64,000 nt of DNA, from the IMG/VR virus record IMGVR_UViG_3300027759_006101, positions 1 through 64,000 of that record; one strand, written 5' to 3'. Position numbers and translations under genes: made by a program. Below the pieces are notes generated by a model, which saw only the letters and a program-made list of their open reading frames with translations, had not been told where the DNA came from and ran no database searches. Numbering within the stretch: position 1 is the first letter of the stretch; each line of letters begins with the position of its first letter. Positions 26,107 to 43,854 of this stretch are shown one piece after another.

Positions 26107-27127
26107 AAACGTTTTCCAGTGCCTCTTTAATTATAGAATAATCTTCAATTTTTTGAATTAATGGTTGGTTATCTTTAATTAGCACCATGTTAACACAGCC
26201 AGTATTTTTCTTATCTGACATGACACATTCCATAAGGCTTTCATAATCAAACCATTCTTGATTAAAAGATACTGTATTTTCTAGAAGTTTTTTGACAATA
26301 TTTAATGTTGCAGAATAATCTTTGTAATTGTAGTTATAAAATAGTTCACTTACCCTCAAGGCTACAAGACATCCAATTGCCACTGCATATCCATGCGATA
26401 ACTTGTACTTTGAGGTAATTTCTAAAGCATGACCAAATGTATGACCAAAGTTCAGAAATTTACGTTCTTTTTTATCAAACTCATCAATCTCTAAAACAGA
26501 AATTTTATAATTAAGACTTTCATAAATGTGATGCAGAACATTTTTATTTTCAGAAATCAAATCAATGACTTTTGATTCTTGAATTTTATTTCTTAAGATA
26601 TCAAACTTCATTAATTCGCCTAAACCACTACAAAAGTTTTCTTTACTTAAGCCATCAAGCCATTCTTCACAAATAAGAATTTCACACGGAGGATAAAATG
26701 TACCAAGAATATTTTTTCTTGACCCATAATTGATAGAAGTTTTACCACCAATACAACTATCAATTTGAGAAAGCAATGTTGTTGGAACTAAATAATATTC
26801 AATGCCTCTACAATAAACAGAAGCACAAAAGCCCACTGCATCTTGTAAAACTCCACCACCAATAACTACAAGCTTAGTTTGCGTATTGACTTTTTTTTCA
26901 GCAAATTTATCAAATATTTTTTCTAGACCACGCCATGATTTTAAGTCTTCATTTGTGTCTGTAACTATGAGATCACCTAATCCAAATTCAGGAAAACAGT
27001 GAGCAACATTTTTGTCAACTACTGCAAGATGATAATCTTCTCCAATGAGTTTATATATTTCGCTCAAGCTTACAAAATTTACAGAATAATCTTTGATTTT
27101 TGATTTGACATTTATTTGGCTGTACAT
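26093..27127 (-). CDS. 3-dehydroquinate synthase-like sugar-phosphate cyclase
   Basis: GGGVLQD, VPTTLLSQIDSCIGGKT, KNILGTF, LNFGHTFGHALE, HGYAVAIG. Confidence 0.9.
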   Translation of the reverse strand: MYSQINVKSKIKDYSVNFVSLSEIYKLIGEDYHLAVVDKNVAHCFPEFGLGDLIVTDTNEDLKSWRGLEKIFDKFAEKKVNTQTKLVVIGGGVLQDAVGFCASVYCRGIEYYLVPTTLLSQIDSCIGGKTSINYGSRKNILGTFYPPCEILICEEWLDGLSKENFCSGLGELMKFDILRNKIQESKVIDLISENKNVLHHIYESLNYKISVLEIDEFDKKERKFLNFGHTFGHALEITSKYKLSHGYAVAIGCLVALRVSELFYNYNYKDYSATLNIVKKLLENTVSFNQEWFDYESLMECVMSDKKNTGCVNMVLIKDNQPLIQKIEDYSIIKEALENVYEVI

Positions 27128-27750
27128 GAATAACCACCATCTATAACTATATTTTGTCCTGATATATATGAATTTTGCACTGTCAAAAAATATACTAAAT
27201 CTGCAACTTCTTTTGTATATCCCAATCTACCAAGTGGAATTTTACTTCTTAAATTCTTCAAATCTTCTTCTGTATTATTTTGAAAAGTCATATCAGTGAT
27301 GAAAAATCCAGGAGACACAGTATTTGCCAAAATATTATAAGTACCATATTCAGCAGTTATAGCTTTTGTAAGAGAGTGTAAGGCATTTTTACTAGCACTA
27401 TATGAGGATCTTCCAGGTTTTGCATAATCTACCCATACGCTTCCAATATTTACAACCCTGCCATAATTTTGTTTTTTCATATAAGGTAAGCAAAGTTTGA
27501 ATAATCTCAAAGGTGAGAAATAATTTACTGTCATCATTTCTTCATATTTCTCACCTTCAAATATAGAGTCTATTATGTTAATTCCAGCATTATTTATCAA
27601 GATATCAATTTTGTCTGGAATAAAAGAAAAGGCTTGAGATAAATCAAGTTCTTCACGAGTTGGAGCAATAACTTCGTGACCATTTTTTTTGAAAATTTCA
27701 GAAATATCACTGCCTATGCCTCTTGACCCACCAGTGATAAGTATTTTCAT
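27112..27750 (-). CDS. Classical SDR oxidoreductase (FabG-like)
   Basis: TGGSRGIG, INNAG, YSASK, NTVSPG, IVIDGG. Confidence 0.9.
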   Translation of the reverse strand: MKILITGGSRGIGSDISEIFKKNGHEVIAPTREELDLSQAFSFIPDKIDILINNAGINIIDSIFEGEKYEEMMTVNYFSPLRLFKLCLPYMKKQNYGRVVNIGSVWVDYAKPGRSSYSASKNALHSLTKAITAEYGTYNILANTVSPGFFITDMTFQNNTEEDLKNLRSKIPLGRLGYTKEVADLVYFLTVQNSYISGQNIVIDGGYSCTAK

Positions 27751-28547
27751 AGTTCTGAAGCAGCTTGATTGATCCTAAATTGTATCATTTTAATTCTATT
27801 TTCATCTTGCAGTGAAAGTTTCTGATACAACTCCATTTTGTTAGTAAGCCATTCATATTCAAACATTTGAGCTTTAAAAAGAGCTCTTGATAAATTTTTC
27901 AACGCAACAGATGGATCAAAAATTGCATATCTTGTTTCAAATTTGTCTAAAAGTTTTTGTGAATGTAGTTTTTTCAAAAAATCTAAAGACTCAATAGATA
28001 CAGCTCCGCCAATACAAGCCTTGGCACCTAATTTCTTTGTTCTTTCAAAAACGTCATGAGCAATTTGGTAAACTTCTTCAGAATTTACAAAAGTTCTATC
28101 CTTTTTCATAGAAGATACTAAGTCAACTCTTCCCAATGTAACACCATATAATGATTCTGCAGCTTTTTGAGAAAGAATTTTATCAATGTTTGCAACAGCT
28201 GTTTGTGTTTCTATATTTACGTTCAATTGCAATGAATTTACTACTTCTGATGGCAGATTATTATGAATGGCATTTATGAATTTAGTTAGCCCAAATTCAG
28301 ACTCAACCATTGGAGCCACTAAACCCTTAACTCCAATTACCATTGAATCTTTAATATCTCTAATTGCTTCTGGACCACCAATTTTTAATGTGACTTTTGT
28401 ATTAGATTGATTGCAAATTTCTTTCAACCTTAAGACTTCGTTAAAAGTTGCACCCTCATCTTCAAAACTTGTTTTAATCCCAACTAGCCCATAGTTTTCA
28501 ACTAAATCTGTAAGGATATTTACGCACTTGAATTCTCTGTTGTTCAT
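27747..28547 (-). CDS. HpcH/HpaI aldolase/citrate lyase-family protein
   Basis: GIKTSFEDEG, VAPMVES, VNIET, VTLGRVDL. Confidence 0.8.
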   Translation of the reverse strand: MNNREFKCVNILTDLVENYGLVGIKTSFEDEGATFNEVLRLKEICNQSNTKVTLKIGGPEAIRDIKDSMVIGVKGLVAPMVESEFGLTKFINAIHNNLPSEVVNSLQLNVNIETQTAVANIDKILSQKAAESLYGVTLGRVDLVSSMKKDRTFVNSEEVYQIAHDVFERTKKLGAKACIGGAVSIESLDFLKKLHSQKLLDKFETRYAIFDPSVALKNLSRALFKAQMFEYEWLTNKMELYQKLSLQDENRIKMIQFRINQAASEL

Positions 28548-28556
28548 AGTTTTATT

Positions 28557-29507
28557 TTACCAAATGAATTTATTTTTGTAATAATTGACTATGTTTAAAA
28601 TCTCATTGTCAAAATTTACTTGTGGAGACCAACCTAAATTTTTAAGTTTAGAATCATCAATTGCATATCTGACATCTTGCCCTGGTCTCATAACGTCATA
28701 AGAGATATAATCATCATAGTTTACAGAAGATTCAAAGTATGCATCTATAATTTTTTTAATTGTATCAATATTCGATTGTTCAAAACCTCCGGCTACATTG
28801 TAAATCTCATTAGACTTACCTTTCTCTATAATTGCAATTATTGCTGATGCAGTATCACTTGCATGTAACCAATTACGTATAGGAGTTCCGTGATTGTGTA
28901 ATGGGATTTTTCTTTTCAAAGTTAAAAACTTACAAGCTTTAGGGATAAGTTTTTCAACATATTGACCAATACCGTAATTGTTAGTTGGTCTGACAATATT
29001 GTAATTTAGATCGAAAGTTCTAGCCCAAGCCACAATTAACATATCTGCAGAAGCTTTAGTTGCAGAGTAAGGATTGCTTGGTTTCAATAAGTCAGTTTCT
29101 TTATGACTCCCATCAACCACATCTCCGTATACTTCGTCAGTGCTGAAGTGAATAAATCTTGGTATTACATATCCTTCTGTTTTGTAATTTTTAAGAAGCT
29201 CTAAAATATTGTGAACACCTGTAATGTTTGAGTGTAAAAAAACATCACTTTTACGTATTGAGTTATCTACGTGAGTTTCTGCAGCAGTATTTATAAAAAC
29301 ATCACAATCAACTAATCTTTTTATATCGCAAATATCAGTTTTCTCAAATTTGAATTTTGGATTACAGAAAAAATCATCCAAAACACTTACATCAGAAGCA
29401 TAAGTACAGCTATCGATGCCATAAACATACCAGCCTTTGTCTAAACAAGCCTTAGTAATATATCTGCCTATAAAACCTAAGCATCCAGTTATATAAACGA
29501 TTTTCAT
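28557..29507 (-). CDS. rmlB: NDP(dTDP)-glucose 4,6-dehydratase
   Basis: TGCLGFIG, AAETHVDNSI, STDEVYG, PYSATK, RPTNNYG, EKLIP, RPGQD.RYA. Confidence 0.9.
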   Translation of the reverse strand: MKIVYITGCLGFIGRYITKACLDKGWYVYGIDSCTYASDVSVLDDFFCNPKFKFEKTDICDIKRLVDCDVFINTAAETHVDNSIRKSDVFLHSNITGVHNILELLKNYKTEGYVIPRFIHFSTDEVYGDVVDGSHKETDLLKPSNPYSATKASADMLIVAWARTFDLNYNIVRPTNNYGIGQYVEKLIPKACKFLTLKRKIPLHNHGTPIRNWLHASDTASAIIAIIEKGKSNEIYNVAGGFEQSNIDTIKKIIDAYFESSVNYDDYISYDVMRPGQDVRYAIDDSKLKNLGWSPQVNFDNEILNIVNYYKNKFIW

Positions 29508-29544: not shown

Positions 29545-29946
29545 ATGAATCGCAAATATCTCCCAACTCTTTCCGAATTGATTGATAGGCTTTCGATTGT
29601 TCAACTAAAAGAAGTTTTTATTTCAGAACATAAAGCCGAATATGCTAAAGAAATATCAGATATTCTCCATGATATTCAAGAACATATTGATGAAAATAAT
29701 GCAGAAATTACAGCTGAAGTAATCCGAGCAGTAGTTGTCTTGTCACAGATGAATTTGCATATTTGGCACAATGAAACAAATTACCGCAAGGGAATCAAGG
29801 ATGGAAATAATCTTGAATTGACTCACGGCTTGAATGGAATTAGAAACACGGCAAAAAATAAAATTCAAGAAGTAGTTGGTGGACGAAAAGACTACAAAAT
29901 TGACTGTTTAGCTGCTGATTTTAAGGACTGGGAGATAAGCTGGTGA
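29545..29946 (+). CDS. DUF6165-like all-alpha protein
   Basis: SELIDRLSIVQLK...NLHIWHNETNYR...NGIRNTAKNKI. Confidence 0.5.
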   Translation: MNRKYLPTLSELIDRLSIVQLKEVFISEHKAEYAKEISDILHDIQEHIDENNAEITAEVIRAVVVLSQMNLHIWHNETNYRKGIKDGNNLELTHGLNGIRNTAKNKIQEVVGGRKDYKIDCLAADFKDWEISW

Positions 29947-30956
29947 ACAGACGTAAGGCTTTGTTGATTTACAGTAGATGGCAATACGGTGGACCTCCTG
30001 TGCTGTCTAATTTTGTAAATAATCTGACTGGCTCATATGAATATTTTTCTGCTGATAAGCCTGAATATGAAATTGAAAATGTTTATATTGGTCCTGAACC
30101 TGGTGAAATAAGCACAACAAAAGAATTGTCAGAAATTTTACTTACAAAAGATTATGACATAGCTGTTGTAAGCGAACTTGAAGATTGTGTCATTGATATA
30201 GATGTTGCAAAAAAAATTGGAAAAAAGTTATTTCTTTTAAATTGGGATTGCAATGTGAATATTTCTTCTCATTTAGAAACAAACTTTAGACTATTTTTGA
30301 AAAAACCTATAAATATTTCTTTTTTGAGAACTAAACATTCTTTGTGGGAATTGTCGCAATATTGCAATGTGCTCAATATGGATTATGGATATGGAGAAAT
30401 GTATCCAAATATTTATTGTTTTTCTACCCCGCAAGATGAAAGAATTTTCAAGAAAACTCCTGAGTCTGAAAAAGAATATGATGTTTTATTTTGCGGCTCA
30501 CTTCATATGCAAGAAAGAAATTCAATATTAAGTAAACTAATAAATTCTGGAGTAAACGTAAAGATTTCTGGAGGAAGATGGCCAGCAGAAAATACGATAC
30601 AGAATTTTGAAGATTATGCAAAAGAATTTGGCAAAGCTAAAATTTCTTTAAATTTTGCAGCTAGCCCTTATTGTAGATATTCACGTAAGGGAAGAGTTTT
30701 AGAGTCCCTATCTACAGGATCGTTATGTATTTCAACATATCCAGACATTTTTAAGTCAAGGCTTGGAACTTGGTTTGAGGTAGATAAACATTTTGCTGAA
30801 TTCAATTTAGATAATTGTGTTGATGTTGTAAATTACTATATCAATAATCAGACAGAAAGAAGAAGAATTGCTGATTCAGGTTATGAGCATTGGAAGAAAA
30901 CTTGTTCAGCTGATGTGTTTTGGCCAAAGCTTTTTGAAATTGCAGGTGTATTATGA
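29943..30956 (+). CDS. GT-B glycosyltransferase, CgeB/Glyco_trans_1_2-like (paralog 1)
   Basis: YDVLFCGS...ER...AKISLN...RKGRVLESL.TG...YINNQTERRRIA. Confidence 0.8.
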   Translation: MNRRKALLIYSRWQYGGPPVLSNFVNNLTGSYEYFSADKPEYEIENVYIGPEPGEISTTKELSEILLTKDYDIAVVSELEDCVIDIDVAKKIGKKLFLLNWDCNVNISSHLETNFRLFLKKPINISFLRTKHSLWELSQYCNVLNMDYGYGEMYPNIYCFSTPQDERIFKKTPESEKEYDVLFCGSLHMQERNSILSKLINSGVNVKISGGRWPAENTIQNFEDYAKEFGKAKISLNFAASPYCRYSRKGRVLESLSTGSLCISTYPDIFKSRLGTWFEVDKHFAEFNLDNCVDVVNYYINNQTERRRIADSGYEHWKKTCSADVFWPKLFEIAGVL

Positions 30957-31894
30957 TGGAAAAAGTTCTTATAACGGGTGGTGCTGGTTACCTTGGATCT
31001 GTGTTGACTGAAGTGCTACTTTTGAAAGGCTACGCAGTAACAGTTTTAGACAGCCTGGTTTACAAACAACTATCATTAACTTCTTTTTGCTACAATAAGA
31101 ATTTTAATTTAGTCGTTGGAGATGTACGAGATACAAAACTTCTTACAAGTCTGGTAGAAACTCATGACATCATCATTCCATTAGCTGCAATTGTAGGGAT
31201 GCCTGCTTGTAAAAAAGATCCAGAACTTACTGTAGCTGTAAATTATCAACAAATTAAAAACATTATTGAGATAATTCAGCCAAGTCAGAAATTGTTAGTT
31301 CCTAATACAAACTCTCAATATGGAAGTTCTGAAACAATTATCACAGAAGAAAGTCCTTTTAATCCACTGTCTCTATATGCTCAAACAAAATGTGATGCAG
31401 AAAAGCGTGTTTTAGAATCTGGTAATGGTATTTCTTTAAGACTTGCTACAGTCTTCGGTGTTTCATATAGACAAAGAATGGATTTACTTGTAAATGATTT
31501 TGTTTACCGAGCATTTACAGATGAATTTTTAGTTTTATTTGAATCACATTTCTTACGAAATTATGTTCACGTAAGAGACGTTGCTAAAGCATTTGTTCAT
31601 CTTATTGAGAACTACCATTCGCTAAATTTCAATGCCTATAATGTTGGTCTTACTTCAGCAAATATGTCAAAGCTTCAATTGGCTCAAAAAATCAAAGAAT
31701 ATGTTCCAAATTTAGTCATCATTGAAGAGCAATTCAAGGAAGATTTTGATAAGAGAAATTATGTCGTATCAAATGAAAAACTTGAAAAGACTGGATGGCA
31801 TTGTGACTTCTCTTTAGATTCAGGTATTGAAGAATTACTTTCTGCTTACAAGATGATTTCTAACTACAAGAATAAGGATTTCACAAATCTTTAA
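30953..31894 (+). CDS. NAD-dependent epimerase/dehydratase
   Basis: ITGGAGYLG, LAAIVG, LYAQTK, LRLATVFG, YVHVRD. Confidence 0.9.
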   Translation: MMEKVLITGGAGYLGSVLTEVLLLKGYAVTVLDSLVYKQLSLTSFCYNKNFNLVVGDVRDTKLLTSLVETHDIIIPLAAIVGMPACKKDPELTVAVNYQQIKNIIEIIQPSQKLLVPNTNSQYGSSETIITEESPFNPLSLYAQTKCDAEKRVLESGNGISLRLATVFGVSYRQRMDLLVNDFVYRAFTDEFLVLFESHFLRNYVHVRDVAKAFVHLIENYHSLNFNAYNVGLTSANMSKLQLAQKIKEYVPNLVIIEEQFKEDFDKRNYVVSNEKLEKTGWHCDFSLDSGIEELLSAYKMISNYKNKDFTNL

Positions 31895-32886
31895 TGAAAG
31901 TTTTATTTGTTTACAATCCCTGGAACACACGAAGGCCTAATGAGTCATCTTATGATATGAAGCTTAAAGGGAGTTTTGAAGCAGCTTTTGGTGAGACAAA
32001 CGAGCATACATATGAAGTTTTGCATTATGGTTTCGAAAATGATGTCATAAGAGATAATAAAACTCTCAATGAAGAAATATTGAAAAGAGATTTTGATGCA
32101 GTTTTTGTAAGTGAAGAGATGCAATTTCACATTACAAAAGAGACAGCAAAAAAACTTGGTAAAAAGCTTTTCAATATGCTTTGGGATACTTGGATTTCTA
32201 TATCTTCTAGTCCAGAAATAAACTTACGAATTGCTCTTAAACAACCTAAAATTTGGGGAGAACATTATAACCCTTGCTCTATGAAAGAATTATCTGAATA
32301 TTGCAATGTAATTGTATCTGATACTGCATATGGGAAAATAGACACTAACATTTATGCAATGTCATCCCCATATGATACTAGAATTTATTACCCAAATTTT
32401 GATGAAGAAAAAAGTATAGATATTTCTCACAATGGTAATATGTATATTCCAGAAAGAATTGAATTTGCAAAAATATTTCACAATGCTGGAGTTGATATTG
32501 ACTATGGCTCTAAAGCTAAGGGATATCTAACTAACTCTGACTATGCAAAAATTCATCGTTCTGCTAAAATATCATTGTGCTATACAAATTCAATATTTGG
32601 CCCAAATCATAAACAAAGAAAAGGAAGAATTGACGAAATCGCAGCTTGTGGCGGTTTTATGTTAATGACTAATCCTGAAGTAATGAAATGGAGAAATAAT
32701 TATTGGTTTAAGGATGGCGTACATTATGTTTCAATGGATCAGAGTAATTGTGTTGATAAAGTAAAATATTATCTTTCTAATGCTGATGAAAGATCAAGAA
32801 TTAGTAAGAATTTTTATGATGAGTGGAATACAAAATATTCACCAAGACCATATTGGGAAAAACTTTTTTCATTTATAAAGGATTAA
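31894..32886 (+). CDS. GT-B glycosyltransferase, CgeB-like (paralog 2)
   Basis: SAKISL...RKGRIDEIAACGGFMLM...KVKYYLSNADERSRI; clear similarity to 29943-30956. Confidence 0.8.
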   Translation: MKVLFVYNPWNTRRPNESSYDMKLKGSFEAAFGETNEHTYEVLHYGFENDVIRDNKTLNEEILKRDFDAVFVSEEMQFHITKETAKKLGKKLFNMLWDTWISISSSPEINLRIALKQPKIWGEHYNPCSMKELSEYCNVIVSDTAYGKIDTNIYAMSSPYDTRIYYPNFDEEKSIDISHNGNMYIPERIEFAKIFHNAGVDIDYGSKAKGYLTNSDYAKIHRSAKISLCYTNSIFGPNHKQRKGRIDEIAACGGFMLMTNPEVMKWRNNYWFKDGVHYVSMDQSNCVDKVKYYLSNADERSRISKNFYDEWNTKYSPRPYWEKLFSFIKD

Positions 32887-32892: not shown

Positions 32893-33864
32893 ATGTTTGA
32901 AGGCAAAAACGTTCTTATCACAGGTGGAGCTGGAATGATTGGAAGAGCTCTAACTGAAAAGTTGATAAATCTAAAAGCAAATATTACAATAGCTGATCTA
33001 CATTTTCCACTTGATTTAGAAAATAAAGTAAATTTTGTAAATAAGGACTTGAGATACTTACATAATTGTGAAGAAATTTGTCAAGGACAAGATTTTATTT
33101 TTAACTGCATTGGCGTAAAAGGTTCTCCTCAAGTATGTGCTTCACAGCCAGCAGATTTTATGGTACCAATGCTTCAATTCAACACAAATATGATGGAAGC
33201 TGCAAGAAGAGCTAATGTTCAGTGGTATTTATATACAAGCTCAGTAGGCGTTTATTCTCCTGCTGAAATCTTTTATGAAGATGATGTATGGTCAACTTTT
33301 CCATCTCCTAATGACAGATTTGCTGGGTGGGCAAAAAGAATGGGAGAATTGCAAGCTGAAGCATATTCAATCCAATATGGTTGGAATAAAGTTTCAATTG
33401 TCAGACCTGCAAATGTCTATGGAAAATTCGATAATTTCAATCCTGTAAATTCTATGGTGATTCCTTCACTTATTAGAAAAGTTCAAGAAAATGAAACTTT
33501 AGAAGTTTGGGGTGACGGTTCTCCAATTAGAGATTTTATTTTTGCTGATGATGTTGCTGAAGGTATGATTACCTGTGTTGAAAATAAAATCACAGAACCA
33601 ATTAATTTAGGTTCTGGTTCTGGTTATTCAATAAAGCAAATTGTTGACTTAGTGATAAAAGCTTCTAATAAAAACCCAAACGTAGAATGGCTTACTGACA
33701 AACCTTCTGGTGACAAAATTAGAATACTTAGTTCAACAAGAGCTAATTCACACGGTGTATTTCCAAAGACTAATTTGGAAAATGGTATCAAGATAGTTAC
33801 AGATTGGTTTGTTGAAAATAAGCAAGACATAGACAAAAAATATAATGTTTTTGTGAACCATTGA
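32893..33864 (+). CDS. Extended SDR, GDP-fucose synthase-like, catalytic Tyr position is Ala
   Basis: TGGAGMIG, FAGWAK, RPANVYG, VIPSLIRK, VWGDGSPIRDF. Confidence 0.8.
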   Translation: MFEGKNVLITGGAGMIGRALTEKLINLKANITIADLHFPLDLENKVNFVNKDLRYLHNCEEICQGQDFIFNCIGVKGSPQVCASQPADFMVPMLQFNTNMMEAARRANVQWYLYTSSVGVYSPAEIFYEDDVWSTFPSPNDRFAGWAKRMGELQAEAYSIQYGWNKVSIVRPANVYGKFDNFNPVNSMVIPSLIRKVQENETLEVWGDGSPIRDFIFADDVAEGMITCVENKITEPINLGSGSGYSIKQIVDLVIKASNKNPNVEWLTDKPSGDKIRILSSTRANSHGVFPKTNLENGIKIVTDWFVENKQDIDKKYNVFVNH

Positions 33865-33872
33865 GGATTTGT

Positions 33873-34826
33873 ATGAATTACTTTGAAAATAAAAAAATAG
33901 TTGTTACTGGAGGCAGTGGTTTTCTGGGAAGCAATTATATTGAGGGTTTACTCAAAAAAGGTGCAAGCGTCAAAACAAATACGCATAAGCGTTCTTTGCA
34001 AGTAAATGCTGAAAATCTCACGGTGCTTGAAAACTGTGATTTGACCCAATTAGATCATTGTATTGAATTAGTTGATGGGGCAGATTATGTAATTCATAGC
34101 GCAGGTAACATTGCACATCCTAGTACTGTAGCAACAGACATCCAAATATCTATTCAAAACATCAATGTTCTTGGAAATGTTTTAGATGCATGTAACAAAT
34201 GTTCAGTTAAAAAATTCTTAGACCTCAATAGTTCAACTGGATATCCTGATAGAAGATTACCAATTACAGAAGAAGAATTTTGGGAAGATGAGCCTTACGT
34301 TTCTTATTTTGGGTATGGATGGATGAGACGTTATAGAGAAAAGCTAATGGAGCATGTATCAAGATTCTCCAAAACCGAAATCTTAGTAACAAGAGGTACT
34401 GCGATTTTTGGCCCTTATGACAATTTTAACATTAAGACTTGCCATGTAGTACCAGCTCTGATTAATAGAGTCTTATCTGATGAAAATCCATTTATTGCTT
34501 GGGGTAGTCCAGATGTAGTAAGAGATTTTTTGTTTGTAGAGGATGTTGTAAACGCTTCTTTGCTTGTTCTTGAAAAAGGCGTACCTATGAGACCCTATAA
34601 TGTTGGGGCTGGCAAAGCAATTACTATCGGAGAAATTCTGGATGTCATATTGAAAACCACCAAAAAGTCACCAGAAATTATATGGGATAATTCTAAGCCT
34701 ACTACAATTCCTTTTAGAATGGTTAGCACAGAAAGAATTACAAATGAGTTGGGATTTTATCCAGAATACACATTTGAACAAGGCATTGAAAAAACTGTGG
34801 AATGGTACAAAAAAGTTTATAAATGA
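33873..34826 (+). CDS. Extended SDR, GDP-fucose synthase-like, YxxxR variant
   Basis: TGGSGFLG, YGWMR, HVVPALI, WGSPDVVRDF; start moved to ATG 33873 after a GAGG SD. Confidence 0.8.
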   Translation: MNYFENKKIVVTGGSGFLGSNYIEGLLKKGASVKTNTHKRSLQVNAENLTVLENCDLTQLDHCIELVDGADYVIHSAGNIAHPSTVATDIQISIQNINVLGNVLDACNKCSVKKFLDLNSSTGYPDRRLPITEEEFWEDEPYVSYFGYGWMRRYREKLMEHVSRFSKTEILVTRGTAIFGPYDNFNIKTCHVVPALINRVLSDENPFIAWGSPDVVRDFLFVEDVVNASLLVLEKGVPMRPYNVGAGKAITIGEILDVILKTTKKSPEIIWDNSKPTTIPFRMVSTERITNELGFYPEYTFEQGIEKTVEWYKKVYK

Positions 34827-35521
34827 TGAAGCAATTTTTAGTAACTGGAGTATCTGGAGGTTTGGGTAAATATTTATTTGATAATTTACCTGATTGCTCT
34901 GGGCTGCACAGAACAAATTTTGATGAAGTAAGTTCAGAATCTTACGATACTATAATTCACTGTGCCTACAATAAAGAAAATATAATTACTGATTACAAGC
35001 AGTATATTGAAGATAATATTTTTTTATTGCAAAAAGTTAAAAAAATTAAACATAAAAAATTTGTTTATATATCATCAATTGATGTTTATAATGAGCAGAA
35101 AAACAATTACTCATTATTTAAAATGTTTGCTGAATCTCTCTTAAATAGTGATGACTTAATTTTACGTCTTTCTTGTTTATTAGGTAAAACTTCAAAACCA
35201 AATCACGTTTCTAAAATAATTTCTAATGTTGAATATATAAGTCTTGAAGAAAATTCAACTTTCAATTACACACTTTATTCTGAGCTTTTAAGTTTTTTTT
35301 CTGAAAACCTACATATCAATAAAATTGGAATTTGTGATTTTGTTGCAAATGATTTTGTGTACTTAAAAGATGTCATCAGCTTTGCTAAATCTGATACCAA
35401 GACTGGGCAATATTGCTATAACTCAAAATATCAATTTGTAAATCCTATATACTTAGATCATCCAGAGTATAATAAAAGCTCTTTAGAAAAATTAAATCTC
35501 TTTATTAACAATCCTGAGTAA
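34823..35521 (+). CDS. Short NAD-dependent epimerase/reductase (RmlD-like)
   Basis: TGVSGGLG, SSIDVY, YSLFK. Confidence 0.75.
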   Translation: MMKQFLVTGVSGGLGKYLFDNLPDCSGLHRTNFDEVSSESYDTIIHCAYNKENIITDYKQYIEDNIFLLQKVKKIKHKKFVYISSIDVYNEQKNNYSLFKMFAESLLNSDDLILRLSCLLGKTSKPNHVSKIISNVEYISLEENSTFNYTLYSELLSFFSENLHINKIGICDFVANDFVYLKDVISFAKSDTKTGQYCYNSKYQFVNPIYLDHPEYNKSSLEKLNLFINNPE

Positions 35522-35556: not shown

Positions 35557-36162
35557 ATGGAAAAATACTTACCTGAAGACCTAATTGCATTTGAAACAGA
35601 TATTGCAAATTGTTTCAATGAAGGCATTATCAAAGCACCCGTTCATTTATATGATGGCAATGAAGAACAAATCATAAAAGTTTTTCAAGATGTATCAGAA
35701 GATGATTGGGTTTTTTGCACTTGGCGTTCACATTATCAATGTTTGTTGAAAGGTGTGCCAAAAGAACAAGTGAAAACCGATATTTTAAATGGTAAATCTA
35801 TAACTTTATGCTATCCTGAACACAAAGTTTATTCTTCTGCTATTGTAACAGGAAGTATTCCAATTGCTACAGGGGTAGCTTTAGATATAAAGCGTAAAAA
35901 TCAAAATAACAAAGTATGGTGTTTTGTTGGAGATATGTCTTCTGAAACTGGTGTTTTTTTTGAAAACTGGAAATACGCAGTTAATCACGACTTACCAATT
36001 ACTTACGTAATTGAAGACAACAATAAATCAGTTTGTTCAGAAACTCGTAAGGTGTGGAATTGTGATAAGTTATTTTTTGAAAACGAAAATAGAAAAATAA
36101 TTTACTACTCATACACTTCTAAATATCCTCACGCTGGGGCTGGAAAAAGGATTCAATTTTAA
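35557..36162 (+). CDS. Minimal ThDP dehydrogenase E1-alpha-like subunit
   Basis: APVHL, TWRSHY, SAIVTG, GDMSSETG...EDNN; only ~200 aa. Confidence 0.85.
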   Translation: MEKYLPEDLIAFETDIANCFNEGIIKAPVHLYDGNEEQIIKVFQDVSEDDWVFCTWRSHYQCLLKGVPKEQVKTDILNGKSITLCYPEHKVYSSAIVTGSIPIATGVALDIKRKNQNNKVWCFVGDMSSETGVFFENWKYAVNHDLPITYVIEDNNKSVCSETRKVWNCDKLFFENENRKIIYYSYTSKYPHAGAGKRIQF

Positions 36163-36698
36163 TGAAATACTTTGATGAACTTAAAAGATCAATGGAATGG
36201 CTTGCTGAAAAAGAAGATACTTTATTTTTAGGCCAAGCTGTTGAGTATCCAGGCACAGCACTTACAAATACTATTGCAAATGTAGACAAAAGTAAGTTGC
36301 TAGAAATGCCAGTAAACGAAGAAATGCAAATGGGTATGACTTTAGGTATGGCGTTAAATGGTAGTGTTCCTGTATCTTTTTTCCCAAGATGGAATTTTCT
36401 TATATTAGCAGCCAATCAACTAGTAAATCACATCGATAAAATAAATATAATGTCAGATGGTGGATATAAGCCAAAAATCATTATCAGAACAGCTATAGGT
36501 TCACAAAGACCATTGCATCCTCAACACCAACATATTTCCGATTTTACTGCAGGTTTTAAGGCTCTTTGTGATTATGTTGATATAATTAGACTGGAAGAAC
36601 CACATCAAGTTTTTAATGCTTATAAATATGCCTATGAAAGAACAGATAATAGGCCAACATTATTGGTAGAATGGGGAGATTTTTACAGTGAAAAATAA
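36162..36698 (+). CDS. Minimal E1-beta/transketolase pyrimidine-binding subunit, no C-terminal domain
   Basis: FLGQAV, LEMPVNEEMQMG, NQLVN, HPQH; 178 aa. Confidence 0.85.
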   Translation: MKYFDELKRSMEWLAEKEDTLFLGQAVEYPGTALTNTIANVDKSKLLEMPVNEEMQMGMTLGMALNGSVPVSFFPRWNFLILAANQLVNHIDKINIMSDGGYKPKIIIRTAIGSQRPLHPQHQHISDFTAGFKALCDYVDIIRLEEPHQVFNAYKYAYERTDNRPTLLVEWGDFYSEK

Positions 36699-37863
36699 CT
36701 TATCTCATCCTCTTATGAATGACAATATTGATAGAGAAGATATTAATTCTGTAATTGATTTCTTGTCAGGTGAAAATATCCCCAAGCTTACAAATGGACC
36801 TAAAGTTGTTGAATTTGAAAACGCTTGGGGCAACTGGCTTGGAACTAAATATAATCTTTTTGTAAATTCAGGAGCTTCAGCAAATGAGTTAACTATGCTG
36901 GCAATTGCTCATATGATAGGTGAGGGAGAAATTATTGTCCCACCTCTTACTTGGATTTCTGACATTTCTTCAGTCTTATTCGCAGGGCATAAATTAGTTT
37001 TTGTGGATGTAAATTTCACAAATCTTTCTTTTGATATAGACAAGCTTAAAGCAGCAATTACACCAAACACTAAAGCAATTTTCTTAACTCATGTTCTTGG
37101 AATTAACGCTATCACAAAAGAACTCTTAGAAATTTGTGAAAAAAATAATATTCTGCTAATCGAAGATGTATGCGAATCTCACGGTACAACTTATCAAGGA
37201 TGCAAAGTTGGTAATTTTGGATTCGCAAGTAATTTTAGTTTTTATTTTGCACATCATATGTCAACAATTGAAGGTGGCATGATATCCACTAACAATTTTG
37301 AATTTTATCAAGTTTGTCGTGCATTAAGATCTCATGGTATGGTTAGAGAAATGACAAGTTCAGCTATGAAAAACTCTGTCATTGAAGCTAATCCAGACTT
37401 AAATCCTGATTTTATTTTCTTGCGTCCAGCTCATAATTTTAGAAGCACTGAAATCAATGCTGTCATTGGCTTATCACAGTTACCAAAGCTTGATGATAAA
37501 AATCAAGAAAGAATAGATAATTTTGATTTATTTATATCAAATTTAAATTCTGAAAAGTATCATATCGCAATTAACACTGAAGGCAATTGTAACTATGCTT
37601 TTATAGTGATTCTGAAAGAGCCAAATTTTGATAAACGAAATGCTCTGGAAAATAAACTTGCTGAAAATGGAATTGAGTTTAGAAGAGGACTGTCTGGTGG
37701 TGGCAATCAAATGAGACAGCCTTTTTTCAAATCTATTTATCAAGACTTTTCTGATTATCCAGTTATTGAGCATGTGCATAATTTTTCTTGGTATATTGGA
37801 AACTACCCAGGTCTGGAAAAAGAAAAGATTAATTTTTTACTTGAGATTTTAAATAGTGACTAA
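36688..37863 (+). CDS. DegT/DnrJ-family PMP-dependent 3-dehydratase (ColD-type)
   Basis: NSGASAN, IEDVCESHG, SFYFAHHMSTIEGG (His at the Schiff-base Lys position); no Fe-S Cys insertion. Confidence 0.85.
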   Translation: MKNNLSHPLMNDNIDREDINSVIDFLSGENIPKLTNGPKVVEFENAWGNWLGTKYNLFVNSGASANELTMLAIAHMIGEGEIIVPPLTWISDISSVLFAGHKLVFVDVNFTNLSFDIDKLKAAITPNTKAIFLTHVLGINAITKELLEICEKNNILLIEDVCESHGTTYQGCKVGNFGFASNFSFYFAHHMSTIEGGMISTNNFEFYQVCRALRSHGMVREMTSSAMKNSVIEANPDLNPDFIFLRPAHNFRSTEINAVIGLSQLPKLDDKNQERIDNFDLFISNLNSEKYHIAINTEGNCNYAFIVILKEPNFDKRNALENKLAENGIEFRRGLSGGGNQMRQPFFKSIYQDFSDYPVIEHVHNFSWYIGNYPGLEKEKINFLLEILNSD

Positions 37864-37865: not shown

Positions 37866-38636
37866 ATGAAAAAAAATTACAGTAATATTAAGATATTAGT
37901 CATAGGCGATTCTTGCACAGATGTTTTTGTGTATGGTAATGCCTTTAGATTAGCACCCGAAGGCCCAGTACCCGTATTCAATCCGGAATCTGAAAAACAG
38001 AATGGGGGAATGGCTTTAAATGTCAAGCATAATATCGAAGCAATTGGGGCAAATGCAACACTCTTGACTCAAAATGAAGACATATTCAAAACAAGATATG
38101 TTGACTCAAGAACAAATAGTCTTTTACTACGTGTAGATACTAATGACACAGCCACTAGAATAAGTAGAGATGTTATTCAAAGCATCACTAATAACACATA
38201 TTTAGATGTTGTATATGATGCAATCATTATTAGTGATTATTGCAAAGGTTTTTTGACAGAAGAAGATATTGATGAAATTTCACTTAATAATTTTAACATT
38301 TTTTTAGATACAAAAAAAATACTAGGTGATTGGTGCAAATACGTTACTTTTATAAAAATTAACTTTTCAGAGTTTGAGCGAACCAAACATACAATTGATA
38401 AATTAGATATTTCTGAAAAACTTATAATAACTAAGTCTGACGATGGTTGTGATTATCAAGGTGAAAATTTTCCAGTAGAAAAAGTGAATATCAAAGATGT
38501 TTCCGGAGCTGGTGATACATTTATTTCTGGGCTTGTATGTGAATATGTCAATTCTTATTCTGTAAAAAATGCGATATTGTTTGCTCAAGAATGTGCCACT
38601 AAAGTTGTTCAAAAAAAGGGAGTTTGTACTATATGA
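37866..38636 (+). CDS. PfkB-family sugar kinase, HldE/RfaE kinase domain only
   Basis: ILVIGD, LAPEGPVPV, GGMALNV, ISDYCKG, KDVSGAGDTF. Confidence 0.85.
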   Translation: MKKNYSNIKILVIGDSCTDVFVYGNAFRLAPEGPVPVFNPESEKQNGGMALNVKHNIEAIGANATLLTQNEDIFKTRYVDSRTNSLLLRVDTNDTATRISRDVIQSITNNTYLDVVYDAIIISDYCKGFLTEEDIDEISLNNFNIFLDTKKILGDWCKYVTFIKINFSEFERTKHTIDKLDISEKLIITKSDDGCDYQGENFPVEKVNIKDVSGAGDTFISGLVCEYVNSYSVKNAILFAQECATKVVQKKGVCTI

Positions 38637-38923
38637 TTATGAAAGAATATTACGCTATGTATTTGACACTTCACCAAAATAAAGTTTGTAGAAGACTTCA
38701 CGTACTTGGCCAAATCATGACTTTATTGTGGATTGCCGGATGTTTGAATTATGGCTATTTTTGGTTTTTGTTATTGACGCCATTTATTGTTTATCCTTTT
38801 GCTTGGAGCGGACACTATTTTTTTGAAAAGAATCAACCAGCAGCATTTAAAGATCCAGTCAAGGCTAAAATTAGTGATTGGATGATGCTTTTTGATATCT
38901 TAAGAGGAAAAATAGATTTTTAA
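38633..38923 (+). CDS. DUF962/Mpo1-like small membrane protein
   Basis: YLTLHQNKVCRRLHV...FAWSGHYFFEKNQPAAF...SDW; start at the ATGA overlap. Confidence 0.8.
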   Translation: MIMKEYYAMYLTLHQNKVCRRLHVLGQIMTLLWIAGCLNYGYFWFLLLTPFIVYPFAWSGHYFFEKNQPAAFKDPVKAKISDWMMLFDILRGKIDF

Positions 38924-39795: not shown

Positions 39796-39804
39796 GGAGA
39801 AAAT

Positions 39805-40395: not shown

Positions 40396-40430
40396 AAAAA
40401 GAGGAGTAAAAAATACTCCTCTTTTTTTTT
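40394..40430. terminator. Bidirectional Rho-independent terminator between the island and MCP
   Basis: A7-GAGGAGTA-AAAAA-TACTCCTC-T9. Confidence 0.9.
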
Positions 40431-40445
40431 GTGACTAGTTTAGAA

Positions 40446-41300: not shown

Positions 41301-41332
41301 TTGATTTTTTCTCCTTTAATTTACGCTACTGA

Positions 41333-41986: not shown

Positions 41987-42019
41987 TTTCTATTTCTCCT
42001 AAATTTTTAAGTGAGGAAA

Positions 42020-43708: not shown

Positions 43709-43789
43709 TTTATTGCTGCTTCCCTTAATAAAATCAAATCTTTTATCAAAGTGTGTTATAAAAGTATTCCTTTATAAACTGATTATTTT

Positions 43790-43816
43790 TTCTTGATAAA
43801 TAGGTTTTACACCTTT
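43790..43816 (-). promoter_or_regulatory. Putative late promoter AAAGG-N18-AGAA
   Basis: AAAGG TGTAAAACCTATTTATCA AGAA, intergenic upstream of the scaffold. Confidence 0.7.
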
Positions 43817-43823
43817 TTTATCT

Positions 43824-43853: not shown

Positions 43854-43854
43854 C

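What the first reader, a model, noticed from the sequence alone, without database searches (positions are those of the whole stretch)
35557..36698. Miniaturised E1-alpha/E1-beta ThDP pair without E2/E3: a second branching enzyme
The ~200-aa alpha has GDMS in place of GDGA and the 178-aa beta lacks the C-terminal domain; no lipoyl or E3 gene is present. PDH-E1-like pairs have been proposed to add two-carbon branches to NDP-ketosugars (e.g. AviB1/AviB2), and YerE does so for yersiniose. Having both a YerE-like enzyme and a split pair implies two separate C-C bond-forming steps (inference).
Basis: partly seen in the sequence, partly recalled or inferred. Interest (0 to 1): 0.6.

Follow-up and report, generated by a model that had tools for sequence, protein, structure and literature searches.

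The report
Mini E1-like ThDP pair, heptose module
A jumbo phage carries a half-sized two-subunit thiamine enzyme related to pyruvate dehydrogenase E1; it belongs to a widespread gene module of marine phages and bacteria that remodels an activated seven-carbon sugar, and it most likely adds a carbon branch to that sugar.

Summary
Window 35557-36162 encodes a 201/202-aa E1-alpha-like subunit with the motif GDMS...EDNN. Window 36162-36698 encodes a 178-aa E1-beta-like subunit made only of the Pyr domain. The whole 358-kb phage record has no E2, lipoyl or E3 gene.

The pair is not a local oddity. It belongs to a large family of about 200 + 178 aa subunits, common in aquatic phage contigs and also present in Pelagibacteraceae, SAR116, Verrucomicrobiota and Burkholderiales.

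In 60 well-flanked loci it travels with:
- a Cj1427-type GDP-heptose C4-dehydrogenase (57/60);
- a ColD-type PLP C3-dehydratase with the catalytic His (56/60);
- a B12 radical-SAM enzyme (51/60);
- a heptose-7-phosphate-kinase-like enzyme (GHMP 29, PfkB 23).

Catalytic residues are invariant: beta Glu53 and His124, alpha Asp127, Asn156 and His193. An alpha2beta2 model scores 0.92 against 0.02 for the best control.

Best reading (inferred, about 0.5): a lipoyl-independent carboligase that decarboxylates a 2-oxoacid, probably pyruvate, and adds the unit to C4 of an NDP-3-deoxy-4-keto-heptose. This would be a miniature, heptose-linked analogue of the AviB1/B2, Pau11/12 and KbDH sugar-branching pairs.

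No biochemistry exists for this family. I rate it a new variant of a known kind.

The parts
35557..36162 (+). Mini E1-alpha-like ThDP (PP-domain) subunit, 201 aa from ATG (202 from TTG at 35554). Carries the motif G126-D127-M-S...N156-N157 and the invariant residues H31, H60 and H193.
   Evidence: The model has pLDDT 95. Its best structural match is human PDH E1-alpha residues 34-268, Z 20.2, rmsd 2.2 A over 193 residues.
36162..36698 (+). Mini E1-beta-like Pyr-domain subunit, 178 aa, with no C-terminal domain. E53 (the cofactor-activating Glu) and Q123-H124 are invariant.
   Evidence: The alpha2beta2 prediction scores 0.92 against 0.02 for the best control. Beta is adjacent to alpha in 90 of 91 related loci.
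36688..37863 (+). ColD-type PLP/PMP-dependent NDP-4-keto-sugar C3-dehydratase, 391 aa. It has the catalytic His in place of the aminotransferase Lys (FYFAHH).
   Evidence: Best PDB match is 2gms (ColD), 1.4e-44. The His aligns with ColD H188, checked against the H188N entry 3b8x. The His is conserved in 72 of 73 neighbours. The gene co-occurs with the pair in 56 of 60 loci.
37866..38636 (+). PfkB-family sugar-phosphate kinase, 256 aa. Its best family match is HldE/RfaE domain I (heptose-7-phosphate kinase).
   Evidence: TIGR02198 rfaE_dom_I at 4.2e-35. It is 46% identical to the cyanophage S-SM2 carbohydrate kinase. In other loci it is replaced by an HddA-like GHMP kinase.
38624..38923 (+). 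Conserved 99-aa ORF that travels with the module. Its homologue in L003 carries a precomputed Mpo1-like (PF06127) match. Function unknown.
   Evidence: found in 20 of 60 loci. No NCBIfam match.
30953..31894 (+). [quoted passage not shown] It would make the 4-keto-heptose.
   Evidence: phmmer match to 6vo6 at 1.8e-106. VIA-align Z 39.3 at 53% identity; the entry title names Cj1427. It co-occurs with the pair in 57 of 60 loci.
29545..29946 (+). Conserved 133-aa ORF of unknown function, usually just upstream of the Cj1427-like gene.
   Evidence: found in 25 of 60 loci. No Pfam or NCBIfam match.
32893..34826 (+). Two GDP-L-fucose-synthase-like SDRs (323 and 321 aa). They are candidate epimerase/C4- or side-chain ketoreductases.
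   Evidence: NF047922 at 8e-42 and 8e-34. The PDB matches are GDP-fucose synthases.
34823..35521 (+). 232-aa ORF with only weak NAD-binding (SDR-like) matches, directly upstream of alpha.
   Evidence: matches below the Pfam cut-offs. Found in only 1 of 60 related loci.
29943..32886 (+). Two paralogous Glyco_trans_1_2-type putative glycosyltransferases (29943-30956 and 31894-32886) that flank the Cj1427-like gene.
   Evidence: The two are 35% identical to each other.
22743..29507 (-). Context only: a divergent operon on the minus strand. It holds a YerE/ALS-like ThDP enzyme (24379-26106), an AroB-related sugar-phosphate cyclase-like protein (26093-27127), an SDR (27112-27750), an HpcH/HpaI aldolase (27747-28547) and an RmlB-like 4,6-dehydratase (28557-29507).
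   Evidence: The gene set matches the ErwE + aldolase + reductase scheme for long acyl-branched sugars (PMC9306805).

Best explanation
The two genes encode a miniature alpha2beta2 ThDP enzyme of the 2-oxoacid-dehydrogenase E1 lineage. It keeps only the PP domain (alpha) and the Pyr domain (beta). It has lost everything that couples E1 to a lipoyl-E2.

It works inside a conserved NDP-heptose tailoring module. The proposed pathway is:
1. Heptose-7-phosphate is phosphorylated at O1 by an HldE- or HddA-like kinase and then nucleotide-activated.
2. A Cj1427-type dehydrogenase oxidises C4.
3. The ColD-type enzyme removes the 3-OH, giving an NDP-3-deoxy-4-keto-heptose.
4. The mini-E1 decarboxylates a 2-oxoacid, most likely pyruvate. 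It adds the ThDP-bound acyl-anion equivalent to the C4 ketone, creating a tertiary alcohol with an acetyl-type branch.
5. SDRs then reduce the product, and in most relatives a B12 radical-SAM enzyme elaborates it further.

Shown here: the homology, the intact catalytic residues, the predicted heteromer, the absence of E2/E3 and the gene co-occurrence. Inferred: the acceptor, the donor and the order of steps.
For: 1. E1 fold and catalytic set.
- Pfam and NCBIfam matches.
- Alpha model Z 20.2 to human E1-alpha, against 15.7 for DXS and 15.5 for a split transketolase.
- Invariant alpha G126/D127/N156 and H193. By the aligned ranges, H193 corresponds to His263 of PDH and His291 of BCKDH.
- Invariant beta E53 and H124.

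2. Heteromer.
- Overlapping genes, with beta present in 90 of 91 loci.
- Natural alpha-beta fusions in cyanophages S-SM2 and P-TIM68 and in P0162 and P0270.
- Complex prediction 0.92 against 0.02 for the best control. The interface covers the ThDP motif and the Glu53/His124 loops.

3. Not a PDH.
- Beta lacks the E2-binding C-terminal domain, and alpha ends right after H193.
- There is no E2, lipoyl or E3 in the phage.

4. Context.
- The ColD-type dehydratase with its catalytic His is the immediate neighbour and occurs in 56 of 60 loci.
- The Cj1427-type C4-dehydrogenase occurs in 57 of 60 loci.
- Cj1427 plus a C3-dehydratase make GDP-3-deoxy-4-keto-heptose in vitro (PMC10680097).
- The Pelagibacteraceae locus L011 and the Burkholderiales locus L172 carry the whole set in one operon: GmhA-like SIS, kinase, nucleotidyltransferase (fused to a HAD domain in L011), dehydrogenase, dehydratase, alpha, beta and rSAM.
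- The minimal phage module (L122) has no other enzyme that would resolve the 4-keto group.

5. Precedent.
- E1-like pairs install C2 branches on keto-sugars, shown genetically for AviB1/B2 and Pau11/12.
- KbDH-alpha/beta does this in vitro with pyruvate and ketone sugar analogues (PMC4425429, PMC4802897, PMC12247030).
Against: - No member of this mini family has been assayed, and no glycan with a C4-branched 3-deoxy-heptose is tied to these loci.
- All characterised sugar-branching E1 pairs are full length (Pau11 is 325 aa and Pau12 is 345 aa; PMC4425429). I could not place the mini clade in a tree with them.
- In several bacterial loci alpha-beta sits next to the heptose-phosphate kinase, and in L011 between it and the GmhA-like gene. 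An APH-kinase-alpha fusion also exists (P0213). Both would equally suit an early step on a sugar phosphate.
- The donor could be another 2-oxoacid. 2-Oxoglutarate cycles in this pathway.
- In this window a YerE-like enzyme could take the same 4-keto intermediate.
- This phage also lacks the B12 rSAM and any recognisable nucleotidyltransferase.
Confidence: 0.5

Rival explanations
1. Early-step ketol or acyl transfer, transketolase- or DXS-like. The mini-E1 would build or alter the sugar-phosphate backbone before activation, for example a 2-oxoacid or ketose donor plus an aldose phosphate. The product would then be isomerised, phosphorylated by the neighbouring kinase and nucleotide-activated. 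This parallels the way LmbR starts the lincosamide octose pathway (that comparison is from my own knowledge).
For: - In L011 the gene order is SIS(GmhA-like)-alpha-beta-GHMP kinase, and in L172 GHMP-alpha-beta.
- A kinase co-occurs tightly with the pair: 74 of 91 loci.
- An APH-kinase-alpha fusion exists (P0213).
- Alpha has weaker DXP_synthase_N and transketolase matches.
- DXS and a split transketolase are the next-best folds.
Against: [quoted passage not shown] This argues for an ordinary heptose backbone made from sedoheptulose-7-P, which needs no extra C-C step.
- Most phage modules keep alpha-beta but have no isomerase: GmhA-like in 9 of 91 loci and SIS in 4 of 91. They would therefore rely on host GmhA and its normal substrate.
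- Alpha is clearly closer to E1 (Z 20) than to transketolase or DXS (Z 15-16).
- There is no Transketolase_N match.
Confidence: 0.17
2. The chemistry is the same (a C-C bond to the 4-keto NDP-sugar), but the donor is not pyruvate. It could be 2-oxoglutarate, 2-oxobutyrate or an aldolase-derived hydroxy-2-oxoacid, giving a branch longer than C2.
For: - 2-Oxoglutarate is produced by the C3-dehydratase and consumed by Cj1427 in the same pathway (PMC10680097).
- HpcH aldolases lie in this window and in L005-L007.
- YerE-like enzymes are known to use C4-C8 donors (PMC9306805).
Against: - The characterised E1-like (alphaKADH2) branching enzymes appear restricted to C2 units from pyruvate (PMC12247030).
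- Aldolases accompany the pair in only 3 of 60 loci, and then always together with a YerE-like gene.
Confidence: 0.15
3. An ordinary catabolic E1 (pyruvate or acetoin dehydrogenase) that the phage supplies to work with the host's E2/E3 complex and redirect central carbon flux.
For: The best named family matches are PDH E1 alpha and beta. Automatic annotations call the homologues pyruvate or acetoin dehydrogenase E1.
Against: - The scores are far below the family cut-offs (90 against 394 bits).
- Beta lacks the C-terminal domain that docks E2. Alpha lacks its C-terminal third.
- The pair is always embedded in sugar-nucleotide genes, in bacteria as well.
- The Pelagibacteraceae genome holding L011 has a separate full-length E1-alpha elsewhere (G002:C5).
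Confidence: 0.03
4. A degenerate, non-catalytic remnant, either a scaffold or a pseudo-enzyme.
For: The truncation is drastic, and the second Gly of GDG is replaced by Met.
Against: - All cofactor and catalytic residues are invariant across sequences down to 31% identity.
- The family has thousands of members.
- The models are confident (pLDDT 95).
- Some homologues carry inteins. From my own knowledge, inteins usually sit at active sites of essential enzymes.
Confidence: 0.02

Closest known systems
Sugar-branching E1-like pairs of actinomycete gene clusters (the alphaKADH2 group): AviB1/AviB2 (avilamycin), Pau11/Pau12 = Plm8/Plm9 (paulomycin), AlmDI/DII (aldgamycin), KbDH-alpha/beta (kibdelomycin)
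   Same: - Separate E1-alpha-like and E1-beta-like genes with no E2/E3.
- Located among deoxysugar genes that create a keto-sugar.
- ThDP chemistry that transfers a C2 unit from pyruvate to a sugar ketone. This rests on knock-outs, and for KbDH on in-vitro ketone carboligation (PMC4425429, PMC4802897, PMC12247030).
   Different: - Those subunits are full length (Pau11 325 aa, Pau12 345 aa). Here the subunits are 202 and 178 aa, with no beta C-terminal domain and an alpha that ends at the catalytic His.
- Those act in antibiotic pathways of Actinomycetes on 6-deoxyhexoses or pentoses. Here the setting is phages and marine or freshwater Gram-negative bacteria, with an NDP-heptose context.
- The phylogenetic relation was not tested.
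YerE and YerE-like enzymes (ErwE, MygE, JanthE), which are ALS-type ThDP carboligases
   Same: The proposed reaction is the same: a 2-oxoacid is decarboxylated and added to C4 of an NDP-3-deoxy-4-keto sugar made by a PMP-dependent 3-dehydratase (PMC9306805, PMC12247030).
   Different: YerE is a single about 575-aa chain of the decarboxylase superfamily (TPP_enzyme_N/M/C). Such a gene exists separately in this window at 24379-26106. The pair belongs to the E1/transketolase-type lineage.
Heterotetrameric 2-oxoacid dehydrogenase E1 (PDH, BCKDH) and acetoin:DCPIP oxidoreductase AcoA/AcoB
   Same: The fold is shared (Z 20, TM 0.81-0.83 on the query). So are the ThDP/Mg motif, the cofactor Glu and both active-site His residues. 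The predicted alpha2beta2 interface is also shared.
   Different: It lacks about 40% of alpha and the whole third domain of beta. It has no lipoyl-E2 partner, and its genomic context is glycan synthesis rather than catabolism.
Campylobacter jejuni GDP-heptose modification pathway (GmhA, HddA, GmhB, HddC, Cj1427, C3-dehydratase, epimerases, C4-reductases)
   Same: The module around the pair contains homologues of Cj1427 (53% identity), the PLP C3-dehydratase, an RmlC-like epimerase, GDP-fucose-synthase-like reductases and HddA/HldE-like kinases (PMC10680097).
   Different: The 20 C. jejuni heptose-pathway enzyme types catalogued in PMC10680097 include no ThDP enzyme and no B12 radical-SAM enzyme, and that paper's text never mentions thiamine. 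Those two are the additions that define this module.
ComD/ComE sulfopyruvate decarboxylase and split phosphonopyruvate decarboxylases (cited from my own knowledge, not tested here)
   Same: The minimal architecture is the same: PP and Pyr domains on two chains of about 170-190 aa, with no third domain.
   Different: Those belong to the pyruvate-oxidase/ALS decarboxylase superfamily (TPP_enzyme_N and TPP_enzyme_C). Here beta is Transket_pyr and alpha is E1_dh. The miniaturisation is therefore convergent.

Membership tests
Heterotetrameric 2-oxoacid dehydrogenase E1 (PDH/BCKDH/AcoAB type) | ThDP-Mg binding motif GDG-X(25-30)-NN in the alpha subunit | tested here: met
   G126-D127-M128...N156-N157. 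G126 and N156 are invariant and D127 is nearly invariant in 34 sequences. The second Gly is Met in about half of the family.
Heterotetrameric 2-oxoacid dehydrogenase E1 (PDH/BCKDH/AcoAB type) | Pyr domain in beta with the cofactor-activating Glu and the active-site His | tested here: met
   E53 aligns with the Glu of the P-I/L-S/N-E motif in human and archaeal E1-beta. Q123-H124 aligns with the QHS His.
Heterotetrameric 2-oxoacid dehydrogenase E1 (PDH/BCKDH/AcoAB type) | Alpha and beta assemble, with the active site at their interface | tested here: met
   This is a prediction only: ipSAE 0.92 against 0.02 for the best control, with runs agreeing in at least 89% of contacts and partner pLDDT at least 89. 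It could partly reflect the model's memory of solved E1 complexes. Natural alpha-beta fusions support it independently.
Heterotetrameric 2-oxoacid dehydrogenase E1 (PDH/BCKDH/AcoAB type) | Beta C-terminal domain (Transketolase_C) that docks the E2 peripheral-subunit-binding domain | tested here: not met
   Beta is 178 aa and is fully covered by Transket_pyr (residues 12-170). The family consensus is 176-182 aa.
Heterotetrameric 2-oxoacid dehydrogenase E1 (PDH/BCKDH/AcoAB type) | Full-length alpha (about 320-400 aa) with the C-terminal region and regulatory loops | tested here: not met
   The model aligns to residues 34-268 of the 362-aa human E1-alpha and then ends. TM on the target is only 0.47.
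Heterotetrameric 2-oxoacid dehydrogenase E1 (PDH/BCKDH/AcoAB type) | Works with lipoyl-E2 and E3 | tested here: not met
   There is no PF00198, PF00364 or PF02852 match in the 358-kb phage record. Host proteins cannot be excluded, and the activity itself cannot be tested here.
Sugar-branching E1-like pairs (alphaKADH2: AviB1/B2, Pau11/12, KbDH) | E1-alpha/beta gene pair without E2/E3, inside a nucleotide-sugar cluster that makes a keto-sugar | tested here: met
   A ColD-type 3-dehydratase is adjacent, and a Cj1427-type C4-dehydrogenase lies in the same operon and in 57 of 60 related loci.
Sugar-branching E1-like pairs (alphaKADH2: AviB1/B2, Pau11/12, KbDH) | Pyruvate-dependent transfer of a C2 unit to a sugar ketone | not testable with these tools
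   Needs an enzyme assay.
Sugar-branching E1-like pairs (alphaKADH2: AviB1/B2, Pau11/12, KbDH) | Sequence clade shared with AviB1, Pau11 and KbDH, and comparable subunit size (about 325/345 aa) | tested here: inconclusive
   The size differs (202/178 against 325/345; PMC4425429). No reference sequences of the actinomycete enzymes were reachable with the tools, so no tree was built.
YerE-like ALS-type carboligases | Single chain with TPP_enzyme_N, TPP_enzyme_M and TPP_enzyme_C domains | tested here: not met
   The pair has E1_dh and Transket_pyr instead. The architecture is met by the separate gene at 24379-26106.
Transketolase (including split-gene transketolase) and DXP synthase | Transketolase_N/DXP_synthase_N PP domain, plus Pyr domain, plus C-terminal domain | tested here: not met
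   There is no Transketolase_N match. DXP_synthase_N scores only 3e-5, against 1.8e-13 for E1_dh. Structural Z is 15.5-15.7, against 20.2 for E1. There is no third domain.

The most novel reading that the evidence does not exclude
The conserved module may be the unknown route to a C9 sugar of the caryose type. Caryose is 4,8-cyclo-3,9-dideoxy-nonose, whose biosynthesis is stated to be unknown (PMC9092360).

The module consists of heptose activation, a Cj1427-type C4-oxidation, a ColD-type 3-deoxygenation, the mini-E1 alpha-beta pair and an HpnJ-like B12 radical-SAM enzyme. In this reading the mini-E1 puts a pyruvate-derived C2 unit on C4 of a 3-deoxy-heptose. The radical-SAM enzyme then closes a carbocycle. 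Its best family match is HpnJ, which is needed for a sugar-to-cyclitol conversion.

Even without the ring closure, this would be the first ThDP-dependent C-branching of a heptose and the smallest known E1-type enzyme. It would be carried by hundreds of aquatic phage contigs and by SAR11.
Probability: 0.1. Interest if true: 0.8.

Novelty: new variant of a known kind. Interest (0 to 1): 0.6.

Why it matters
- It would define a minimal E1-type ThDP enzyme, about 380 residues per protomer, that works without lipoyl partners. That is of interest for enzyme evolution and as a compact carboligase for making tertiary alcohols.
- It would add a C-C bond-forming step to heptose tailoring, a pathway so far known only from Campylobacter-type capsules.
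- It would show that abundant marine phages, and bacteria such as SAR11 and SAR116, encode the means to make an unusual branched higher-carbon sugar. Such a sugar would probably be a surface glycan that matters for phage-host recognition.
- The prediction can be tested directly with the published GDP-heptose enzyme toolbox.

Tried and rejected
- A genome-contig scan with the single alpha protein found nothing. The profile scan found six mini-type bacterial loci among the 80 best hits kept of 488.
- Look-ups of the kinase-alpha fusion P0213 and of the most distant alpha P0265 gave only contigs of 1-3 kb with no usable context.
- A family HMM did not align the C-terminal YPHxGxG motif to full-length E1-alpha. 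The H193 = His263/His291 equivalence therefore rests on the end points of the structural alignment.
- The word search with the Cj1427-like SDR returned only generic names. The identity of 6VO6 was settled through the fold search instead.
- The papers PMC544256 (the AviB1/B2 knock-out) and PMC7509852 (the Cj1427 structure) are not held. A full-text search for phage + E1 + radical SAM + GHMP + DegT found nothing.
- I looked for the module's B12 radical-SAM enzyme, GHMP kinase, RmlC-like epimerase, PNP, GmhA and nucleotidyltransferase elsewhere in the 358-kb phage. None was found. The one radical-SAM hit, at 191 kb, is a 205-aa unrelated protein.
- I considered a 5'-deoxyadenosine/7-deoxysedoheptulose salvage reading, prompted by PNP + APRT + kinase in L005. 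I set it aside because PNP is in only 12 of 60 loci, and it is explained more simply as relief of radical-SAM product inhibition.
- I could not ask whether Trinickia (Burkholderia) caryophylli carries the module. A sample of 401 Burkholderiales genomes gave 2 carriers.
- I did not build a tree with the AviB1, Pau11 and KbDH sequences, because no reference to them was available.
Full report
WHAT IS THERE

The window is the first 64 kb of a 358,269-bp IMG/VR virus record, which CheckV estimates to be 89% complete. It is a tailed jumbo phage with about 32% GC. It has a Mu-type portal at 48118-50499 and a large terminase at 57846-59957.

Between about 22.7 and 40.4 kb lies a block of nucleotide-sugar genes. 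The finding's two ORFs sit inside it. Alpha runs 35557-36162 from ATG, or 35554 from TTG, and is 201/202 aa. Beta runs 36162-36698 and is 178 aa. The two are translationally coupled through an overlapping TAATG.

Alpha matches E1_dh over the first 176 of 300 profile positions. Beta matches only the Transket_pyr domain. N156-N157. The whole phage record has no E2 core, no lipoyl domain and no E3 dimerisation domain, although control genomes do score in those searches.

THE PAIR IS A FAMILY, NOT AN ACCIDENT

- The word search returned 5,927 relatives. The best 120 are all 73-95% identical and 198-202 aa long, and they come from metagenomes, some of them Tara Oceans.
- The exhaustive search of 50%-identity representatives found 2,063 clusters at E<=1e-3 and 115 at E<=1e-30. 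Complete members among the best hits are mostly about 195-220 aa.
- IMG/VR holds more than 500 matching contigs.
- Among species-representative genomes the mini type turned up in two Pelagibacteraceae single-cell genomes, a SAR116 genome, two Verrucomicrobiota MAGs and an unclassified MAG.
- It was also found in 2 of 401 sampled Burkholderiales genomes, one of them with 67% GC around the locus.

In an alignment of 34 alphas reaching down to 31% identity, H31, D51, G107, G126, N156, H193 and G195 are invariant. D127, H60 and E154 are nearly so. GDM is simply the majority form of the motif. In 28 betas, E53, R76, H90, R109 and Q123-H124 are invariant.

STRUCTURE AND CATALYTIC APPARATUS

The alpha model is confident, with mean pLDDT 95. 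Its best structural matches are:
- human PDH E1-alpha, residues 34-268: Z 20.2, rmsd 2.2 A over 193 residues;
- BCKDH E1-alpha, residues 56-296: Z 19.6;
- DXS: Z 15.7;
- a split transketolase: Z 15.5.

Foldseek gives a TM-score of 0.81-0.83 on the query but only 0.47 on the target.

Model residue 198 pairs with residue 268 of PDH and residue 296 of BCKDH. The invariant H193 therefore falls at the position of His263 in PDH and His291 in BCKDH, the alpha-subunit active-site histidine. This is an inference from the aligned ranges, because an HMM alignment did not bridge that region.

Beta E53 aligns with the cofactor-activating glutamate, and Q123-H124 aligns with the QHS histidine of E1-beta.

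The enzyme has thus kept the ThDP site, the activating Glu and both histidines. It has lost the last third of alpha and the whole E2-docking domain of beta.

An alpha2beta2 prediction scored 0.92, against 0.02 for the best of three controls. The three runs agree in at least 89% of contacts and the partner pLDDT is at least 89. The confident contacts are alpha 103-115 and 128-141, which include the ThDP motif, and beta 48-68 and 117-124, which include Glu53 and His124. This supports binding but does not prove it, and it may partly reflect the model's memory of solved E1 complexes.

Independent support for the heteromer:
- beta follows alpha in 90 of 91 related loci;
- cyanophages S-SM2 and P-TIM68 encode the two as one protein, 402 aa in S-SM2;
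- the metagenomic proteins P0162 and P0270 are fusions of the same kind.

THE COMPANY IT KEEPS

I fetched 91 related loci and scored them against the window's proteins and those of three reference loci. In the 60 loci with at least 5 kb upstream and 6 kb downstream of alpha, the pair co-occurs with the following:

| Partner | Loci (of 60) |
|---|---|
| Beta | 60 |
| SDR like window 30953-31894 | 57 |
| DegT-family protein like window 36688-37863 | 56 |
| B12-binding radical-SAM enzyme | 51 |
| GHMP kinase | 29 |
| PfkB kinase | 23 |
| RmlC-like cupin | 28 |
| YerE-like gene | 5 |

With a more sensitive query, the radical-SAM enzyme is found in 81 of all 91 loci.

Each partner could be named more precisely.

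- **The DegT protein is a ColD-type 3-dehydratase.** Its best solved relative is ColD (2gms, 1.4e-44). Its FYFAHH aligns with ColD's FYSHH. In the H188N mutant entry that first His reads Asn, which identifies it as the catalytic His that replaces the aminotransferase Lys. The His is kept in 72 of 73 neighbours.
- **The two kinase types point to the same substrate.** The best family match of the PfkB kinase is HldE domain I (4e-35). The best match of the GHMP kinase is HddA (5e-30). These are the two known heptose-7-phosphate 1-kinases.

Complete versions of the module exist in bacteria. In Pelagibacteraceae locus L011 the gene order is: GlnA | EamA | GT4 | SIS(GmhA-like) | alpha | beta | GHMP | ColD-like | B12-rSAM | RmlC-like | Cj1427-like | NTP-transferase-HAD fusion. 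A 67%-GC Burkholderiales genome has GHMP, alpha, beta, ColD-like, nucleotidyltransferase, SIS, Cj1427-like, an unknown protein and the rSAM in one operon, at 48-60% identity to the reference proteins. A T4-like phage contig (L122) carries the minimal set rSAM-alpha-beta-GHMP-ColD-SDR between uvsW and gp47/46 homologues.

MECHANISM PROPOSED

[quoted passage not shown] That product is the heptose counterpart of CDP-3,6-dideoxy-4-keto-glucose, the acceptor of YerE (PMC9306805).

E1-like pairs without E2/E3 are the second known way to put a C2 branch on a keto-sugar:
- AviB1/B2 and Pau11/Pau12 (= Plm8/Plm9), by gene knock-out and pathway engineering;
- KbDH-alpha/beta, in vitro, with pyruvate and ketone sugar analogues (PMC4425429, PMC4802897, PMC12247030).

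I therefore propose that the mini-E1 decarboxylates pyruvate and adds the hydroxyethylidene-ThDP carbanion to C4 of the NDP-3-deoxy-4-keto-heptose. The SDRs, and in most relatives the radical-SAM enzyme, would then finish the sugar.

One argument from economy supports this. The minimal phage module contains no other enzyme that would dispose of the 4-keto group.

The steps that are shown are the homology, the conserved residues, the predicted assembly, the missing E2/E3 and the co-occurrence. The acceptor, the donor and the order of steps are inferred. I put this reading at about 0.5.

RIVALS

- **An early transketolase/DXS-like step on a sugar phosphate (about 0.17).** This is the serious rival. 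It is suggested by the gene order around the kinase and by a kinase-alpha fusion (P0213). Three things argue against it. The 53% identity to Cj1427 implies a standard heptose. Most phage modules have no isomerase. The alpha fold is clearly closer to E1 than to transketolase or DXS.
- **A different 2-oxoacid donor (about 0.15).** This is a variant of the main idea.
- **A catabolic E1 that serves the host's E2 (about 0.03).** The missing docking domain and the invariable glycan context make this unlikely.
- **An inactive remnant (about 0.02).** The invariant catalytic residues make this unlikely.

THIS WINDOW IN PARTICULAR

Here the module is alpha-beta-ColD-PfkB-orf99. The Cj1427-like gene, two putative glycosyltransferases and two GDP-fucose-synthase-like SDRs lie upstream. 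The phage has no B12 radical-SAM enzyme of the module type, no GmhA and no recognisable nucleotidyltransferase, so it must lean on its host for those steps.

That operon also holds an HpcH/HpaI aldolase, a short SDR, an AroB-related sugar-phosphate cyclase-like protein and an RmlB-like 4,6-dehydratase. This gene set reproduces the published scheme of ErwE, aldolase and reductase for sugars with long acyl branches (PMC9306805).

They probably lie in two different sugar routes, one hexose-based and one heptose-based.

NOVELTY

The chemistry proposed is known. The miniature architecture is not described in anything I could find. Nor is the heptose context, the fixed partnership with a B12 radical-SAM enzyme, or the abundance in phages and SAR11-type bacteria. 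I rate it a new variant of a known kind, with interest 0.6.

The boldest reading not excluded is that the full module makes a caryose-like carbocyclic C9 sugar. That sugar is a 3-deoxy sugar with a C2 unit on C4 and an extra ring closure, and its biosynthesis is stated to be unknown (PMC9092360). The radical-SAM enzyme's best family match is HpnJ. I give this reading about 0.1.

Noticed in passing
window 22743-29507 (minus strand): A divergent operon holds a YerE/ALS-like ThDP enzyme (575 aa), an AroB-related putative sugar-phosphate cyclase (TIGR04425, 4e-89), a 212-aa SDR, an HpcH/HpaI aldolase and an RmlB-like 4,6-dehydratase (TIGR01181, 1.7e-88). It fits the published ErwE + aldolase + reductase scheme for long acyl-branched 3,6-dideoxyhexoses. 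The cyclase-like gene is unexplained.
   Followed up: partly
window 48118-50499 (minus strand): The Mu-type portal protein (793 aa) carries a C-terminal DUF559/REase_MTES_1575 endonuclease-like domain at residues about 705-776. This is an unusual fusion for a portal.
   Followed up: no
P0175 (550 aa) and P0158 (553 aa), homologues of alpha: Some mini-alpha genes are interrupted by inteins. P0175 has an Intein_splicing/Hint domain inserted after about residue 124 of alpha. P0158 carries a LAGLIDADG_3 domain (residues 231-309) ahead of its alpha domain (residues 342-547).
   Followed up: partly
P0213 (552 aa): An APH-family phosphotransferase domain is fused to the N-terminus of a mini alpha. 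The protein is known only from a 3.2-kb contig. It is a third kinase fold, besides PfkB and GHMP, associated with the pair.
   Followed up: partly
L003:5672-7404 (and L004): A second, larger E1-like pair (277 + 308 aa) lies next to a TylF-like methyltransferase, in the same cluster as the mini pair. Some phages therefore carry two E1-like pairs.
   Followed up: no
L005:12810-13863 (also L006, L007; PNP in 12 of 60 loci): A phosphoribosyltransferase and a PNP/MTA-nucleosidase-family gene sit between the ColD-like gene and the kinase. They may dispose of the 5'-deoxyadenosine produced by the radical-SAM enzyme.
   Followed up: partly
window 29545-29946 and 38624-38923: Two small conserved ORFs (133 aa and 99 aa; the second is Mpo1-like in L003) travel with the module in 25 and 20 of 60 loci. 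They often lie side by side upstream of the Cj1427-like gene. Their function is unknown.
   Followed up: partly
window 38923-40395: A PhyH-family Fe(II)/2-oxoglutarate dioxygenase (290 aa) and a small methyltransferase (196 aa) close the sugar block. Neither is conserved in related loci (1 of 60 and 0 of 60).
   Followed up: no
window 40000-46000: GC rises from about 0.31 to 0.41-0.43 right after the sugar block, where the genes switch to the minus strand. Those genes include a 1379-aa protein with no family match. The low-GC sugar island may be a mobile acquisition.
   Followed up: no
LR756501.1/LR756503.1, positions 322608-323189: A 735-kb uncultured 'megaphage' record also encodes a mini-alpha homologue (37% identity). 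The record has no annotation.
   Followed up: no
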